The position numbers were made by a program, and so were the translations under genes. This document shows positions 12,033 to 64,000 of a stretch of DNA of 64,000 bases, in pieces. Numbering within the stretch: the stretch's first letter is position 1; the number at the start of each line of letters is the position of its first letter. Source of the DNA: Octopus sinensis (lineage: Eukaryota); assembly GCF_006345805.1 (NCBI RefSeq), contig NC_043007.1, positions 16,368,001 to 16,432,000 on the forward strand. Direction: 5' to 3'. The notes below the pieces were generated by a model. That model did not search any database. It was not told where the DNA came from and saw only the letters and a list, made by a program, of their open reading frames with translations.

Positions 12033-12075
12033 AACTTCAGGCACATTTTGGTCTTATGATCTCATCAGTGAAGCC
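12033..12075 (-). ncRNA. Decayed minimal hammerhead motif
   Basis: Minus strand reads cttca CTGATGA GATC ataa GACC AAAA TGTGCC tgaag. Stem I cttca/tgaag is intact. Three of the departures from an inferred GATCGAAACGCGTC are CpG-type transitions. Confidence 0.5.
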
Positions 12076-13568
12076 CAACAAGCCATGCTCCAATACCATA
12101 TACTCCATTGTCCTCATCATCATTTAACGTTCGTCTTCCATGCTGGCTTCAGCTGGACAATTTGACAGGAGCTGGCAAGCCGGAGAGCTGCACCAGGATC
12201 CATTGTCTGTTTTGATACAGTTTCTGCAGCTGGATACCACTTTTCTAACGCCAGCCACTTAACGGAATGTACTAGGTGCTTTTTATGTGACACCAGCACA
12301 AGTGCTTTTTACAAGGAACTGACACCATATCAAAACTCTCCTTAATACATCAATACACTAATCTGTTCACAATTAGCTGTTCGCTAAAGTGACTCTCTGT
12401 ACTCGTGCAATGAGTATCGTGTACTCTGTGTAACAAGATACACCCTTCACTCACTCATGTACTCCTTAATAAGAAACTCGGTTTACATTCTCACATACAT
12501 ATTCTTTACTTGATTAAATTTCCGTTATTATATGTCTATCTATATTTAGATAAGTGCACTATATAGTGTCTGTTTGAAAGTGATGCTGGTGATGGTGGTG
12601 GGAAAATGAAGATGGTGATGTTGGCAATGAAGATAATGGCCAGGATGATGATGGTAGTGGTAGTGGTGGTGGTGGTGCTGCTGCTGCTGATGTTGGTGTT
12701 AATGATGGTTAGGAATGCAGTGGTGTTAGTGGCAGTGCTGACTGTGTTATCATCATCACCATCATCATAATAGAGGTGATGATAGTAGCAGTGATGGTGG
12801 TAAAGGTGGAAGCAAGTCACTCGTGATGACGATGATGATGATGGTGATGATAATGATTCCAATACAGGGATGGTGGATTAATGTTTGCGTATTTCCTGAA
12901 AAGATTGTTTGTTTCTTGTTTTTTTTTTGTTTTTTATATATGCTAACACATCTAAATATTATGAATTGCCTTTCTAACAAATAGAGAAATCATTGTCATA
13001 ATCATCATTATCATCATCATCACTATATTATTATTATCATTATTATTATTATTTATGTTGTTATTGTGCACATTATTTGCTGTTTCTTCTTCATTTTATC
13101 TTCCCCCCCCCTCTCTCTCTCCCACTCCGAGGGAGGCGTGTCTATCCATTCACACCTACACAACAATCCTTGGCTTTCAGGATAATTCCTGTCTAAACAA
13201 TTAGGTCAAACTCTGTTTGAGCTGCTCCGATGCCAATTTTCTTTGTTGCTGTTTTTGTTGCATTCATAGTTCACCCACATTGTTATTGTCATTATTAAAG
13301 AAATCATCATCATCATTATTATCATTATTATTATTATTATTATTTGTTGTTGTTAGTTTTTGGCAAAAATTTGAATAACATTAACAAGCTCAGAAAGCAA
13401 ACGTGTAAAGAATATCAATTGTTTTGGCTCTTCATTAAGACCCTAATTAAGTTTCTATTTTAAGAAATAAAGACTGTGAATCCCTAGCCTTCACAGACCC
13501 ATGGCCCTCTTCATAGTTATATAGCTCTATTCTTAAGGGTCGCTGTTACCAGTACCCTTTCTCTAACT

Positions 13569-20857: not shown

Positions 20858-21653
20858 CAGTGCTTCTCAACTGGGGTTGATATATAACCCTTAAGGGTCC
20901 ATATAAGATTTTGTTAAAATTTATGTGCAAGAAATTGCTTACATTTCTATAATACACAAATGTATTTTATTGGGTTGTCCAGAAAGTTCATGCCGATTTA
21001 TAGTAGCTTACCTTTTGACCTATTTTAGAACATGGTTGAGTCCATAAAATAGGATTTGACTACACTTCCATTTAGAGCACAGTTTAAGCTATCTTTTCGT
21101 GGAAGGTTTATGTTCCTATAACCTGTGTTAATTCTGTAACCCTTTAAAATGGAAGATAAGGAAGTTCATTTTCGGCACTTGATGCTTTGGGAGCCAGACA
21201 AAAATTGCTGCAGCTCGGCTGGGATGTGTTATCCCACCCTCCATATTCACCAGATATTGCTCCTTCGGATTTCCACTTATTCAGGCCTCTGCAGAATAGT
21301 CTTAATGGTAAAAATTTCAATTCCTTGGATGATGTAAAAAGATACCTTGATGAATTCTTTTCCATGAAACCACCTCAATTCTGGGAAGAGGGTATTTTCA
21401 AATTGAAAGAAAGATGGAGACGCATTGTGCAACAATATAGTTCATATTTGGTTGATTAAAAATGTAATGGCAAGCATTTATTGACCTTTTTCTTGCCTTT
21501 AAAAATTGGCATGAACTTTCCGGACAACTCAATAGTTTTTTTTTTTATATAATCCCGAATAATATTTGTTTATATAAATACTGTAGAATTTTTTCACATG
21601 GCTAAGGAGGTCCAGTAGAGTAAAATTGGACCAAAACTGGTTGAGAACCATGG
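20858..21653. mobile_element. hAT-type MITE hosting the mariner derivative
   Basis: 8-bp TSD atttacat at 20850-57 and 21654-61. Ends cagtgcttctcaac / gttgagaaccatgg. Related to 13569-13916. Confidence 0.75.
20970..21532 (+). mobile_element. Internally deleted mariner (Tc1/mariner D34D-type) transposon, 563 bp
   Basis: TA TSDs at 20968-69 and 21533-34. Roughly 30-bp TIRs ttgggttgtccagaaagttcatgccgatt / aattggcatgaactttccggacaactcaa. N-terminal remnant MEDKEVHFRHLMLWE (21149-93) is fused to the C-terminal QKLLQLGWDVLSHPPYSPDIAPSDFHLF...W..IVQQYSSYLVD (to 21459). Confidence 0.93.
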
Positions 21654-54760: not shown

Positions 54761-55049
54761 TTTCCCACCTTTACTAAGCATCAAAATATTGCATTTTATA
54801 TGTATGTCTTTTGTTGTTTTGTTATTTTTTATTTTTAATGTCCAATTTGACACTATATGTATATATGTGCTGGTGCCACGTAAAATGCACTCAGTCCACT
54901 CTGCAGGGTGATTGGTGTTAGGAAGAGCATCCAACTGTAAAACAGACACAGGGGTCTGGTGCAGTCTTCTGCCTAGCCAGCTCCAGTCAAACTGTCCAAC
55001 CCATTCCAGAATGGAAGGCAGATGTTAAAAGATGATGAGGATATATATA

Positions 55050-55320: not shown

Positions 55321-55543
55321 TGTGTATAAGAGAGTTTGTGTGTGTATATATATATATATATAAAAAGAGCAATAAAGATTCAAGTTAATTTTAAAAAATT
55401 TACTTGAATATGGTACCTAACTTAGATGCACCAAAAAAAACTATACTGATTTAACAATACAGTAATGTGGGGTGATTATAAGCGAGAAAGAAGCAACTTC
55501 ATGAGTATAGCCTCAAACACTAGGATGTCTAGAGAACTTACAT

Positions 55544-55639
55544 GTATTTTAGCTGATGAGTACGGGACTCGTTTATATGCTGTAATCTTTGCAACTTTTA
55601 ATAAAACCTGTCCTTGTATGAAACGATCGTACTAAATAC
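55544..55639 (+). ncRNA. Putative type I hammerhead ribozyme (minimal, Penelope-type) upstream of the first visible calpain exon
   Basis: Stem I GTATTTTAG (55544-52) pairs with CTAAATAC (55632-39) with one bulge. Core CTGATGA at 55553-59. Stem II GTAC-GGGAC pairs with GTCCTT-GTAT around a long loop. GAAA at 55620-23. Palindromic stem III ACGATCGT. GUA cleavage triplet at 55629-31. The fold was assigned by eye and activity is untested. Confidence 0.7.
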
Positions 55640-55819
55640 CTATCCATTCTTGTTGCTTCTTTCTCGCGTATATATATATATATATATTATATATATATAT
55701 ATACTGTTTTATATAAACACCAATCTTTCAAATAAATTTCTTACAAGTTTGTTAATTTGTTTCATTGCTTTAAAATCTCTTTTTTTTTCACTTCATTTTG
55801 TTTTGTTTTCCATTTGTAG

Positions 55820-55889
55820 GAAATCTGTGAAGACCCAAAATTCTTTGTTGGCGGTGCCTCCCGATTTGATGTAAAACAAGGAGAACTTG
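55820..55889 (+). CDS. Calpain (CysPc domain) internal exon, 70 nt: EICEDPKFFVGGASRFDVKQGEL + G
   Basis: Pyrimidine-rich acceptor ttttccatttgtAG (55818-19) and donor GTaagt (55890). The peptide matches the calpain EIC..P.F..GGA.R.D..QG.LG segment. It joins the next exon in phase 1. Confidence 0.93.
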
Positions 55890-56809
55890 GTAAGTTGGTT
55901 TTTATTTCCCAAACTCTCAACAGATATTCTAAACTAGTACAGTTTATTTCGTTCCCATTATGGCAACCACTACTTGGCTTTAACTACTAGCAGCATGTAA
56001 TTTAGTTTCCTCACCAATTACTTCACTGAAAATATAATATTACTATTTTTGTTTGTGATTAATTTAGAACTTGCATTCCAATGTAATTTTTCTTATTCAG
56101 TATTTATTTAATGAGAATTTCAAGATTAATTTGGAACTAATTGTTGTAATTACACTGCAAGGTGTGTTGTGTAATATGCGATATATGTACTATAAACATA
56201 ACAGGTCATGGTTATCAAGTCACACCACTGATTGTCCTTGCTTCATAAAGCTTTGTAATGTCACATCTTATTAAAGTTTTGTAATGATACTTTTGAATCC
56301 TTCTATATGTTGGATATACAGATTTCACAAAGCAGGGATAGACACATCTGTCTTCACACAACTTCAAATTACTCCACTACACACGATACTCCAATAAATA
56401 CAAACTCTCAACAACTTCCTACTACTTCCATGCACTCTCAATGACTGTTACAACCTCTCTCATCTCAACCAATACACTACTTTTTATAAGATTTCAACTG
56501 TTCCATTCTTCCAATTGCACATGTGTGTCAATGACTCTCACCACAACATATACATAGGGTGGAGGCATAGCCGTTTGGTTAAGAACTTTGCTTCACTGCC
56601 ACATGATTTCATGTTCAAGCCCACTGTATGGCACCTTTGTGAAATGGTGTTTTTTTTTCACTATAGCATCATGGCCTTGTGAGTAGACTTAGTTGATGAA
56701 AACTGAGATACCTGTCATGTACATATAAACAGATATTTGTTTGCTTCAAATTTAACCTGTTTTGTGTTACTTTGATAACATTTGTGTTAGCATAAATTTT
56801 CTACCGTCC

Positions 56810-57105
56810 GAACGTGGCAGATGCCAGTGCCGCCTGACTGGCATCTGTGTCAGTAACACGTAAAAGCACCGACCGATCATGGCCGTTTGCCAACCTGCTC
56901 TGGCCCCTGTGCCGGTGGCACGTAAAAAACACCCACTACACTCACGGAGTGGTTGGTGTTAGGAAGGGCATCCAGCTGTAGAAAATACTGCCAAATCAGA
57001 CTGGAGCCTGGTGCAGCCTCCATGGCTTACCAGACCCTGGTCAAACCATCCAACCCATGCTAGCATGGAAAACGGACGTCAAATGATGATGATGATGATG
57101 ATGCT
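56810..57105 (+). mobile_element. SINE-like family D in calpain intron
   Basis: Internal repeats, aggaagggcatccagc block and (GAT)n tail. Confidence 0.8.
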
Positions 57106-57371: not shown

Positions 57372-57490
57372 TTAAACCATTTGTTCTTAAGAAATAAAAC
57401 ACTTTTTTTTCATATGTGTCAGTGAGAAGTTTCAAATTTGAATGCAGATGAAATTACACCTGCAATCAAACAGTCCTGCACACCTTATAC

Positions 57491-58035
57491 ATGTCATCAT
57501 CTGAAAAAGATTTTCTAACTAGAAAGGGTATGGCCTGGTCAGCCTGTAATGATATGCATAAGATCTGGTCATCAAGTCTAAGTAGGGATTTCAAACTTAA
57601 AATCTTCAAAGCCACAGTTGAACCAATTCTACTATATGGCTCAGAAACCTGGACGTTATCAAAGAAGCTTGAGAGGCGGTTGGATGGAACTTATACTCGT
57701 CTCCTTATGAGAGCTCAAAATCTCTCGTGGAAACGACATCCAACCAAAGTACAAATATATGGGAAATTACCACCTGTATCATCTCTTGTGAAAGGTAGGA
57801 GAGTCCAGTTTGCTGGACATTGTTGTAGACCTGAAAATGAGGCAATTTCTACTCTTCTCCTCTGGAAGCCATCTGCTAGCGATACCTGAGAGCACACACT
57901 CTCTTACCCTGATGTAATCTCCGGGGATACAGGCATCCAGCAACAGGACCTCTGTAATGCTATGATGGGACGTGAAGTCTGGCGTAACATAGTAAATTCC
58001 ATTGTCTCGACCACGGTCGAACAATGACGATGATT
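57491..58035 (+). mobile_element. 5'-truncated RTE-clade LINE 3' end (pseudogenised ORF C-terminus)
   Basis: Peptide K.KIFKATVEPILLYGSETWTLSKKLERRLDG...SWKRHPT...RRVQFAGHCCR...W is typical of the RTE post-RT region. One in-frame stop at 57887-89. Ends in a (GAT)-like tail. Confidence 0.88.
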
Positions 58036-58089
58036 ATGCAGCGTCTCACACCCTCATTGACACATTGTTCTTTTTTGTTATTATTTCAG

Positions 58090-58342
58090 GTGACTGTTGG
58101 TTGTTGGCGGCTGTTGCCTCTCTCACCATTGATCAGAAATTACTGTTTAGAGTTGTGCCACTTGGTCAAAACTTTCAGGAAAACTATACTGGCTGCTTCC
58201 GCTTCCGTTTCTGGCATCAAGGAGACTGGGTGGATGTCGTCGTTGATGACAGGATCCCAACTTCTTACGGACAGTTGATTTACATGCATTCTGCTGACAA
58301 GAATGAGTTCTGGAGCGCTTTGTTGGAAAAGGCTTATGCCAA
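58090..58342 (+). CDS. Calpain catalytic-Cys exon, 253 nt: (G)[83 protein letters not shown](K)
   Basis: Acceptor ttatttcAG (58088-89) and donor GTaagt (58343). Contains hallmark calpain motifs [16 protein letters not shown] and [13 protein letters not shown]. Phases 1 and 2 are compatible with both neighbouring exons. Confidence 0.97.
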
Positions 58343-58811
58343 GTAAGTAACTTTGTTGTATCATTTCTCTTGATTGTATGATTGTTTTTTTTATGATTTT
58401 TTTAATGATTTTGTATGATTTAAAGCATCAGCTGGCAGAAACGTTAGCACGCCAGGTGAAATGCGTAGCCGTATTTCATCTGCCATTACGTTCTGAGTTC
58501 AAATTCTGCTGAGGTCGACTTTGCCTTTCATCCTTTCGGGGCTTTCTGTGTTTAGCCCCTTGTGGGTAGTAAAGAAATATGTATGATTGGTTTTTTTTTC
58601 CTTGTTTGGTGTAGTGGAAGGTTTTATGTCTGTCACTTTTAGAAACCCTCCAAAAACAATGAAGCTGAAGCAGTTAATGTTCCTCTTGGACAGTTGCATG
58701 GTGATTGTTGCTAGCAGACTGAGTAATCTGGTCACATTTGTTCAGCTCTGTTTTAGAAGTTATATGGTGGAAGACATTCCAACCATAACTATCATTGCTT
58801 TTATTCAGATA

Positions 58812-63076: not shown

Positions 63077-63245
63077 GCTTAATGGTTGCTATGAAGCCCT
63101 TAAGGGTGGAAATAGCTCTGAAGCTATGGAAGATTTCACTGGAGGTGTTACAGAAATGTTTGACCTCAGAGAATCACAAGATAAACTGTTCCAAATCATG
63201 TTGAAAGCTTTCCAGAGATCTTCTCTCATGGGATGTTCTATTGAT
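63077..63245 (+). CDS. Calpain exon, 169 nt: (K)[56 protein letters not shown]
   Basis: Acceptor tctctttctttctcAG (63075-76) and donor GTaagt (63246). Contains the [18 protein letters not shown] and L/MGCSID motifs. Its first base completes the AA+G Lys codon from the previous exon. Confidence 0.96.
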
Positions 63246-64000
63246 GTAAGTATTTGACGCTTGATAAAAGTAATTGGTTGTCAACGAAACTAATTGCTTG
63301 CAGAGATAGTTAAAATAATGAATGAGGGCAGTGACTAAATATTTTGTAATTAATGAAATTAATGAATACACATTTCAAAAATTACTGTTACAAGTACAGG
63401 CATAACTGTGAGGTTAAGCAGTTCACTTCACAACCCTGTAGTTTTGGGTTCAATCGCATTGCATGACATCTTGTGTAAGTGTCATCTTCTCTAGCCCCAG
63501 GTCAACCAATGCCTTGTGGGGTCATCTAGTAGTTGGAAACTGCAGGCAGTCCATCATGTTTGTGAGGGCTTGCAATGTGCAAATACATGAATATTCCATG
63601 CTGTCATACCTCGAGTGAAGTAGTGCTGATGTTAATGTTCTTTATTGACATTTTGACCAATTAGTGCAGGCTAAACACAGAGGGGACAAACAAGGACAGA
63701 CAAAGGGATTAAGTCGATTACATCGACTTCAGTGCATAACTGGTACTTAATTTATCGACTCCGAAAGGATGAAAGGTAAAGTCAACCTCGGTGGAATTTG
63801 AACTCAGAACGTAATGGCAAACGAAATTCCGCTAAGCATTTCGCCCGGCGTGCTAACGTTTCTGCCAGCTCGCCGCCTTTCTGTCATCATTCTGTCTCCT
63901 CCATACTTTCATGGGTTGAACAGAATTTGTTGAAGTAGATTTTTTATGGCCAGATGCCCTTTAAGATAATATAACCCTATGACTAGATATTTCCACATAA

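What the first reader, a model, noticed from the sequence alone, without database searches (positions are those of the whole stretch)
55544..55639. Near-intact hammerhead ribozyme on the calpain sense strand, about 180 nt before a splice acceptor
Seen: all conserved core bases are present and correctly ordered as a type I hammerhead (CUGAUGA 55553-59, GAAA 55620-23, U16.1 and A17 at 55630-31). Stem I has 8 bp with one U bulge. Stem II can extend to about 9 bp and carries an unusually long loop of about 40 nt. Stem III is only 2 bp plus a palindrome (ACGAUCGU). The single non-canonical position is G10.1-U11.1, explainable as CpG decay. Known: minimal hammerheads with palindromic stem III occur in Penelope-like retroelements and usually need dimerisation; some intronic hammerheads are conserved in amniote genes such as RECK. 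Inference: this is a Penelope-derived ribozyme, far better preserved than the other copies here. It could cut the calpain pre-mRNA after 55631 and affect splicing, or define a transcript 5' end.
Basis: partly seen in the sequence, partly recalled or inferred. Interest (0 to 1): 0.8.

Follow-up and report, generated by a model that had tools for sequence, protein, structure and literature searches.

The report
Solo hammerhead ribozyme relic in calpain intron
A complete-looking hammerhead self-cleaving RNA motif does sit in a calpain intron, but it is most likely an ordinary, fairly young leftover of a ribozyme-carrying retroelement and not a regulator of the gene.

Summary
At 55544-55639 (+) all hammerhead core bases are present in type I order, with helix I (8 bp, one U bulge), helix II (9 bp, two G·U, one U bulge, 41-nt extension) and a 2-bp helix III inside the palindrome ACGAUCGU. 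My descriptor scan finds no other hit on either strand of the window. A Markov null gives about 5e-5 such hits per window.

No covariance model recognises it: no Rfam hammerhead match even at E<=10, and under 7.5 bits with my own model of four active retrozyme hammerheads.

The motif lies in a 192-196-bp unit closed by a 21-bp inverted repeat (16 bp perfect), next to (TA)n tracts. The unit keeps its CpGs (o/e 1.09; window 0.44). No second copy exists in the window or in any collection I could search.

Best reading: a solo, 5'-truncated copy of a Penelope-like or retrozyme-lineage element, in sense orientation, 188 nt before the acceptor. Cleavage of calpain pre-mRNA is untested. It is probably weak: no partner for dimerisation, G10.1·U11.1, and no canonical loop-loop contact.

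Intronic solo hammerheads are common in animals, so interest is low. Taxon (cephalopod) and family copy number could not be checked.

The parts
55544..55552 (+). Helix I, 5' strand (GUAUUUUAG; U55547 bulged)
   Evidence: Pairs with 55632-55639; read, scored 8 bp
55553..55559 (+). Core box C3-A9 (CUGAUGA)
   Evidence: 13 CTGATGA in both strands of the window, only this one completes a hammerhead
55560..55619 (+). Helix II: 9 bp (55560-68 with 55610-19; two G·U, U55614 bulged) enclosing a 41-nt imperfect hairpin extension (55569-55609)
   Evidence: constrained fold keeps the extended helix II
55620..55623 (+). Core G12 A13 A14 and A15.1 (GAAA)
55623..55630 (+). Helix III: A15.1-U16.1 and C-G around GAUC; 8-nt palindrome ACGAUCGU that could pair with a second copy
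   Evidence: same design as mussel, coral and axolotl retrozyme hammerheads
55631..55631 (+). H17 (A); predicted cleavage between 55631 and 55632
   Evidence: Position inferred from the hammerhead consensus; not tested
55632..55639 (+). Helix I, 3' strand (CUAAAUAC)
55477..55497 (+). Left arm of the inverted repeat that encloses the hammerhead (16 nt perfect, 21 nt at 95%). Read as an inverted copy of the unit's 3' end.
   Evidence: I2; the 16-mer occurs nowhere else in the window at 0-2 mismatches; fold z = -4.1
55652..55672 (+). Right arm of the inverted repeat; 3' end of the unit
55345..55362 (.). (TA)9 tract, 115 nt left of the inverted-repeat unit
   Evidence: The identical 19-nt GTA(TA)8 recurs at 55668-55686, but TA tracts are frequent in the window, so this is weak evidence for a target duplication.
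55669..55703 (.). (TA)n tract directly abutting the unit's 3' end; likely insertion target
55820..55890 (+). Calpain exon (EICEDPKFFVGGASRFDVKQGELG), acceptor ag|G at 55819/55820, donor G|gtaag at 55890/55891

Best explanation
This is a solo, non-autonomous remnant of a hammerhead-carrying retroelement of the Penelope-like / non-LTR-retrozyme lineage.

The remnant is about 175 nt of the element's 3' part (55498-55672) plus a 21-nt inverted copy of its own 3' end (55477-55497). It inserted in sense orientation at a TA microsatellite in a long calpain intron.

In the parent element the type I hammerhead would process multimeric element RNA. Its palindromic helix III lets two tandem copies pair into an active dimer.

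Here it is transcribed only as part of the calpain pre-mRNA. It has no second copy to pair with, a G·U at 10.1-11.1, and no canonical loop 1-loop 2 contact. I therefore expect at most slow, low-yield self-cleavage after A55631 and no dedicated role in calpain expression.

Shown: the motif, its completeness, its non-random nature, the inverted repeat, the retained CpGs, and the intron and strand context.

Inferred: the retroelement origin, the young age, and the low activity.
For: - Complete core and three helices, and the only descriptor hit in the window. Null expectation is about 5e-5 per window.
- Helix III (GAAA-CGAUCG-UA) has the same design as self-cleaving retrozyme hammerheads from mussel, coral and axolotl (PMC7229834).
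- The long helix II (9 bp) is a trait of Penelope minimal hammerheads (PMC4209133).
- The unit is closed by a 21-bp inverted repeat and abuts (TA)n. Penelope-like elements often carry an inverted 5'-truncated partner, target microsatellites including (TA)n, and carry the hammerhead near the 3' end (PMC8557442).
- CpG o/e is 1.09 in the unit (7 CpG). It is 0.44 for the window, and the 114 nt to the left and 115 nt to the right have no CpG at all. This fits a younger insert.
- A second, mutated hammerhead-like relic in the window shows that such elements have visited this genome.
- Solo monomers are common, and about 43% of Xenopus retrozyme copies are intronic (bioRxiv 10.64898/2026.07.22.740005).
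- The giant squid genome has 235 Rfam Hammerhead_1 loci and Penelope elements (PMC6962438).
Against: - No other copy of the unit turned up in the window, in JGI metagenome or viral contigs, or as a translated ORF in 5.8 and 15 billion proteins. So no family is demonstrated.
- No Penelope ORF or pseudo-LTR is nearby.
- No Rfam hammerhead model hits, even at E<=10. My own model gives less than 7.5 bits.
- An inverted-repeat unit flanked by TA is also what a Tc1/mariner MITE looks like.
- The low-activity claim is an inference. Nearest-neighbour folding does not separate the candidate (HHR fold 5.9 kcal/mol above the MFE) from active reference hammerheads (0.5-6.6 kcal/mol above). The mussel motif, with a like helix III, cleaves as a single copy at about 0.1 per min (PMC7229834).
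Confidence: 0.6

Rival explanations
1. Exapted intronic ribozyme. The hammerhead self-cleaves the calpain pre-mRNA 188 nt upstream of the acceptor, cutting the 3' splice site off from the upstream transcript. That would tune splicing or yield, or create an alternative RNA 5' end. It would be analogous to the conserved type I hammerheads in amniote RECK, CTCL and DTNB introns.
For: - Sense strand, complete core, close to an acceptor.
- CpGs inside the motif are retained (4 in 96 nt, o/e 1.41), which could also reflect constraint.
- Active reference hammerheads have the same helix III design and similar folding penalties.
- Domesticated intronic type I hammerheads exist (PMC6155905).
Against: - No conservation data could be obtained.
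- The CpG retention extends over the whole inverted-repeat unit, not just the ribozyme. That fits youth better than constraint.
- G·U at the otherwise highly conserved G10.1-C11.1 pair (PMC4209133).
- No partner copy in cis.
- No match to the Rfam HH9 or HH10 models.
- In Xenopus, retrozyme copies are depleted from introns, which suggests such insertions are tolerated or harmful and not recruited.
Confidence: 0.07
2. Chance motif in an unrelated hairpin element. The 192-bp unit would be a MITE-like DNA transposon or foldback (19-bp terminal inverted repeats, TA target duplication). The hammerhead-like arrangement inside it would be coincidental and never was a ribozyme.
For: - TA|TAAGCGAGAAAGAAGCAAC...GTTGCTTCTTTCTCGCGTA|TA reads as terminal inverted repeats with a TA duplication.
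- A stop-free stretch at 21160-21456 carries HPPYSPDIAPSDFHLF, which by eye (my own knowledge) resembles mariner transposase, but it has no Pfam hit.
- No covariance model supports a hammerhead.
- The helices are AU-rich in an AT-rich genome.
- If tens of thousands of windows were screened, about 2 hits of this helix quality per genome are expected before the palindrome is required.
Against: - Expectation per window is about 5e-5. The palindromic helix III, a specific trait of real metazoan hammerheads, lowers it about 30-fold more.
- The design matches active mollusc and coral motifs position by position.
- The inverted-repeat motif has no other copy in the window.
Confidence: 0.12
3. Live retrozyme. 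The unit would be a currently active non-LTR retrozyme copy that yields small circular RNAs by double self-cleavage and ligation.
For: Unit size (192-305 bp), low GC (33-36%), a type I hammerhead with a palindromic helix III, and a strongly self-paired fold (z = -3.0 to -4.1) all fit metazoan retrozymes (PMC7229834).
Against: Retrozyme RNA circles need two cleavage sites. Only one unit and one hammerhead are present: no tandem repeat and no second copy in 64 kb.
Confidence: 0.03

Closest known systems
Type I hammerheads of metazoan non-LTR retrozymes (e.g. Mytilus galloprovincialis Mg353, Acropora millepora Amil224; PMC7229834)
   Same: Type I topology. CUGAUGA / GAAA / UH core. Helix III is one or two pairs plus a short palindromic insert (mussel CGCGCG, coral CAGUACUG, here CGAUCG). 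Low-GC host unit of a few hundred nt with a strongly self-paired fold.
   Different: Retrozymes occur as tandem arrays, whereas this is a single unit. Their helix II is 4 bp with a 5-6-nt loop, whereas here it is 9 bp with a bulge and a 41-nt extension. Helix I here is AU-rich and bulged. 10.1-11.1 is G·U. A model built from four such motifs does not score it.
Minimal hammerheads in pseudo-LTRs of Penelope-like elements (PMC4209133; PMC8557442)
   Same: Long helix II. Occurrence mostly as scattered single motifs from truncated copies. Position near the element's 3' end. Microsatellite targets and inverted truncated partners. Presumed need for dimerisation and low activity as a single motif.
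   Different: Minimal motifs lack helix III and usually have an unpaired base between A9 and 10.1, a short helix I (4-5 bp) and a conserved G10.1-C11.1. Here there is a helix III insert, no extra base, an 8-bp helix I and a G·U. No RT/GIY-YIG ORF or second pseudo-LTR is nearby.
Conserved intronic type I hammerheads of amniotes (RECK, CTCL, DTNB; Rfam HH9/HH10; PMC6155905)
   Same: Sense-strand intronic location of a retroelement-type type I hammerhead.
   Different: Those are defined by deep conservation and keep the loop-loop tertiary contacts. Here conservation is unknown, the contacts are not recognisable, and the Rfam models do not match.

Membership tests
Hammerhead ribozyme, type I | Conserved core C3-U4-G5-A6-N7-G8-A9 ... 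G12-A13-A14 ... A15.1-U16.1, H17, in this order | tested here: met
   Read; descriptor hit
Hammerhead ribozyme, type I | Three helices around the core, with helix I open-ended and helices II and III closed | tested here: met
   Helix I 8 bp, helix II 9 bp, helix III 2 bp
Hammerhead ribozyme, type I | G10.1-C11.1 closing pair of helix II | tested here: not met
   G55560·U55619. It could be CpG decay, but that is an inference.
Hammerhead ribozyme, type I | Recognised by curated covariance models (Rfam Hammerhead_1, _3, _II, HH9, HH10) | tested here: not met
   No hit at gathering score, nor at E<=10 on 381 nt or on the whole window (none among the 150 matches listed of 180). Likely cause is the 41-nt helix II extension and the bulged AU-rich helix I.
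Hammerhead ribozyme, type I | Loop 1-loop 2 tertiary contact | tested here: inconclusive
   No canonical loops. Both helix I and helix II carry a bulged U five pairs from the core, which is suggestive only.
Hammerhead ribozyme, type I | Site-specific self-cleavage | not testable with these tools
   Needs transcription and cleavage assays. The folding energy gap (5.9 kcal/mol) lies within the range of active references.
Non-LTR retrozyme | Tandem array of at least two units, each with a type I hammerhead | tested here: not met
   No tandem repeat other than (TA)n; no second unit or hammerhead
Non-LTR retrozyme | Unit of about 170-400 bp, low GC, highly self-paired | tested here: met
   192-305 bp, GC 0.33-0.36, fold z = -4.1 and -3.0
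Non-LTR retrozyme | Match to a model of retrozyme hammerheads | tested here: not met
   Model R1 (coral, mussel, two axolotl) with filters off: the candidate is below 7.5 bits. The best hit is another locus.
Penelope-like element | RT plus GIY-YIG ORF flanked by pseudo-LTRs that carry the hammerhead | tested here: not met
   The longest non-repetitive stop-free stretch in the window is 184 aa. The only RT piece is an APE-type LINE tail at 57452-58038.
Penelope-like element | Insertion signature: 5' truncation, inverted truncated partner, microsatellite target | tested here: inconclusive
   A 21-nt inverted copy of the 3' end and a flanking (TA)n are present, but the same picture fits a MITE.
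Domesticated intronic hammerhead (HH9/HH10 type) | Conservation of motif and position across species | not testable with these tools
   No orthologous or same-species DNA could be obtained

The most novel reading that the evidence does not exclude
The motif is an exapted, catalytically active intronic hammerhead of an invertebrate. It would have an unusually long helix II and bulge-bulge tertiary contacts in place of loop-loop contacts. It would cut the calpain pre-mRNA just upstream of a 3' splice site and so set isoform choice or output. That would make it an invertebrate counterpart of the amniote RECK hammerhead.
Probability: 0.05. Interest if true: 0.7.

Novelty: new member of a known kind. 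Interest (0 to 1): 0.22.

Why it matters
If it is only a relic, it adds one more scattered hammerhead to the thousands already known in animal genomes.

Two points have some practical value:
- Curated covariance models miss structurally complete motifs that have long helix II insertions, so Rfam-based counts in genomes may be underestimates.
- The unit shows how a ribozyme-bearing retroelement lands in sense orientation close to a splice site. That is the raw material from which the conserved amniote intronic hammerheads are thought to have arisen.

If it proved active and conserved, it would be a testable case of ribozyme control of pre-mRNA processing outside vertebrates.

Tried and rejected
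1. Rfam at gathering score and at E<=10 gave no hammerhead. The hits were only microsatellite-driven miRNA false positives.

2. My own covariance model of four published retrozyme hammerheads did not recover the candidate. It found another, mutated relic instead.

3. 'The hammerhead fold is 6-7 kcal/mol above the MFE, so it is inactive'. I rejected this after calibration, because active mussel and coral motifs show 6.6 and 4.0 kcal/mol.

4. A 305-bp TA-to-TA unit with a 19-bp target duplication. I downgraded this because TA tracts are frequent in the window, and the left 114 nt have no CpG, like the flanks.

5. Search for more copies:
- blastn within the window;
- inverted-repeat and helix III word searches;
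- JGI metagenome and viral contig pattern scans;
- exact-ORF look-ups;
- translated-unit searches of 5.8 and 15 billion proteins (the 36 weak hits are multi-stretch matches to long repetitive proteins).
All were negative.

6. Getting same-species DNA through the LINE fragment. The ENA contigs share only the LINE, at 70-85% identity.

7. Paralogous 'empty site' from flanking repeats: the flanks are unique.

8. Similarity of the unit to the mussel or coral retrozyme outside the core: none.

9. tRNA or SINE head in the unit: none.

Full report
**What is there.**
- GUAUUUUAG (helix I, 5' strand)
- CUGAUGA (55553-59)
- GUACGGGAC ... GUCCUUGUAU (helix II)
- GAAA (55620-23)
- CGAUCG
- U55630, A55631
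- CUAAAUAC (helix I, 3' strand)

Helix I has 8 pairs with U55547 bulged. Helix II has 9 pairs if U55614 is bulged. It starts with G55560·U55619, contains a second G·U, and encloses 41 nt. Helix III is A15.1-U16.1 plus C-G around GAUC, within the palindrome ACGAUCGU. G10.1·U11.1 is the single departure from the canonical core neighbourhood. The TpG at 55619-20 could be a decayed CpG, since the window has CpG o/e 0.44 and a TG/CA excess.

**Gene context.** tblastn with calpain relatives maps three exons on the + strand, at 55820-55891, 58089-58343 and about 63078-63248. Their joined translation matches Pfam Peptidase_C2 at E=2.6e-73. The acceptor is at 55819/55820, so 188 nt separate the predicted cleavage site from the exon. 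No upstream calpain exon is detectable in 1-55800. The intron is therefore long, and the motif sits at its very 3' end.

**Is it more than chance?**
- A descriptor scan looked for CUGANGA, helix I of at least 4-5 bp with at most one bulge, helix II of at least 3 bp, and a 0-12-nt helix III insert. It returns this site as the only hit on both strands of the window and in 66 kb of other eukaryotic DNA fetched later.
- I simulated 400,000 CTGATGA anchors under a second-order Markov model of the window. Three reached helix I >=8 and helix II >=4, and none of those also had a palindromic insert.
- With 5.7e-5 anchors per nt, this is about 5e-5 expected per window and about 2 per 2.7-Gb genome before the palindrome is required.
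- The motif is therefore very unlikely to be accidental in one window. If a whole genome was screened, a lucky hit is not excluded.

**Model-based membership fails.**
- Rfam finds no hammerhead family at gathering score, nor at E<=10 on a 381-nt slice or among the 150 matches listed of 180 for the whole window.
- I built a covariance model from four self-cleaving retrozyme hammerheads printed in the supplement of PMC7229834 (coral, mussel, two axolotl). I ran it with filters off. The candidate is below 7.5 bits.
- The best hit is instead 12034-12074 on the minus strand (24 bits, E about 1e-4). It is a compact type I motif with AAAA in place of GAAA and C in place of U16.1, so it is a dead relic.
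- The failure for the candidate is explained by the 41-nt helix II extension and the bulged, AU-rich helix I. It is still a failed test.

**Folding.**
- The nearest-neighbour MFE of the 96 nt is not the hammerhead fold. The MFE is -16.3 kcal/mol. The fold with all three helices enforced is -9.4 kcal/mol, and with helices I and II only it is -10.4 kcal/mol.
- I first took this as evidence against activity, then calibrated it. The helix I+II fold lies 4.0 (coral), 6.6 (mussel), 2.0 and 0.5 (axolotl) kcal/mol above the MFE for motifs that do cleave. The candidate lies 5.9 kcal/mol above.
- The argument is therefore uninformative, and I dropped it.

**Surroundings.**
- A 21-bp inverted repeat (16 bp perfect) at 55477-97 and 55652-72 encloses the motif. 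The 16-mer occurs nowhere else in the window at 0-2 mismatches.
- The enclosed 196 nt fold with z = -4.1.
- The unit abuts (TA)n on its right, and a second (TA)9 lies 115 nt to its left.
- The unit holds 7 CpG (o/e 1.09). The 114 nt on its left and the 115 nt on its right hold none, and the window average is 0.44. This marks the inverted-repeat-bounded unit, and not the 305-bp TA-to-TA stretch, as a younger insert.
- There is no other copy of the unit in the window.

**Comparison with what is published.**
- Canonical metazoan type I hammerheads have a helix III of 1-2 pairs capped by a short palindromic loop and work best as dimers of tandem copies. Penelope minimal motifs lack helix III, have a long helix II, and occur mostly as scattered single motifs from truncated elements (PMC4209133).
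- Retrozyme units are about 170-400 nt, low in GC and highly self-paired. The mussel motif GAAA-CGCGCG-UC cleaves at about 0.1 per min from a single-copy construct (PMC7229834).
- Penelope-like elements often carry an inverted 5'-truncated partner, prefer microsatellite targets including (TA)n, and carry the hammerhead near the 3' end (PMC8557442).
- Solo retrozyme monomers are common, and about 43% of Xenopus copies are intronic, although depleted relative to intergenic DNA (bioRxiv 10.64898/2026.07.22.740005).
- The giant squid genome has 235 Rfam Hammerhead_1 loci (PMC6962438).
- The candidate combines a retrozyme-type helix III with a Penelope-type long helix II and a Penelope-like insertion signature.

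**Most likely mechanism.** This is a 5'-truncated copy of such an element, with a 21-nt inverted fragment of its own 3' end. It inserted in sense orientation at a TA tract.
- In the parent element the ribozyme processes multimeric RNA.
- Here it is a passenger of the calpain pre-mRNA. There is no partner in cis, since the only other relic is 43 kb away on the other strand.
- It has a G·U at 10.1-11.1 and no canonical loop-loop contact.
- I therefore expect at most slow cleavage and no dedicated function (confidence 0.6).

**Rivals.**
- An exapted splicing-linked ribozyme (0.07).
- A chance motif inside a MITE-like hairpin element with TA duplication (0.12).
- A live retrozyme (0.03).

**What could not be done.** I could not obtain any other DNA of the source species or of close relatives.
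- The calpain search returned nothing above 72% identity.
- Exact-ORF look-ups failed.
- Translations of the unit have no relatives among 5.8 and 15 billion proteins.
- Pattern scans of JGI metagenomes and viral contigs were empty.
- ENA contigs reached through the neighbouring LINE share only that LINE.

Noticed in passing
window 12034-12074 (-): Second hammerhead-like motif: GCUUCA CUGAUGA GAUC AUAA GACC AAAA UGUG CC UGAAGU. It is the best hit of my retrozyme-hammerhead model (24 bits, E about 1e-4). G12 is A and U16.1 is C, so the core is dead. Three of the four departures from a CGAAACGCGUC-like ancestor would be CpG transitions, which is my speculation. It lies just 3' of a SINE-like copy and is antisense to calpain.
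   Followed up: partly
window 12110-12320 (-), 54866-55041 (+), 56908-57095 (+), and at least 6 more: A roughly 200-bp SINE-like repeat ending in ...gttaaatgatgatga occurs at least 9 times at 70-76% identity. Two copies flank the hammerhead region within about 1.3 kb.
   Followed up: partly
window 57452-58038 (+): The 3' end of an APE-type LINE lies in the next intron. The ORF tail gives only a weak, below-cutoff Pfam DUF6451 match (21.2 bits against a cutoff of 28). It is 70-85% identical in DNA to contigs in several ENA metagenome assemblies. One of these carries an 871-aa Exo_endo_phos + RVT_1 ORF.
   Followed up: partly
window 21160-21456 (+): A stop-free stretch ends in ...HPPYSPDIAPSDFHLF.... 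By eye (my own knowledge) it resembles the C-terminal catalytic region of mariner transposases. Pfam gives no hit at E<=0.01.
   Followed up: partly
whole window: Strong CpG depletion (o/e 0.44) with TG/CA excess (9889 observed, 7575 expected), GC 38.6%. Very many (TA)n and (CA)n tracts produce dozens of spurious sub-threshold miRNA-family matches such as mir-297, mir-466 and mir-1277.
   Followed up: no
window 12680-12769 (+): Sub-threshold Rfam mir-598 match (28.3 bits, gathering score 69). The giant squid genome paper reports 172 mir-598-like loci, thought to be repeat-derived (PMC6962438). This is a faint hint about the taxon and no more.
   Followed up: no
window 55378-55409: A 32-nt near-palindrome (87.5% self-complementary) lies in the AT-rich, CpG-free stretch between the left (TA)9 and the inverted-repeat unit. 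It folds as a separate hairpin. Its meaning is unknown.
   Followed up: no
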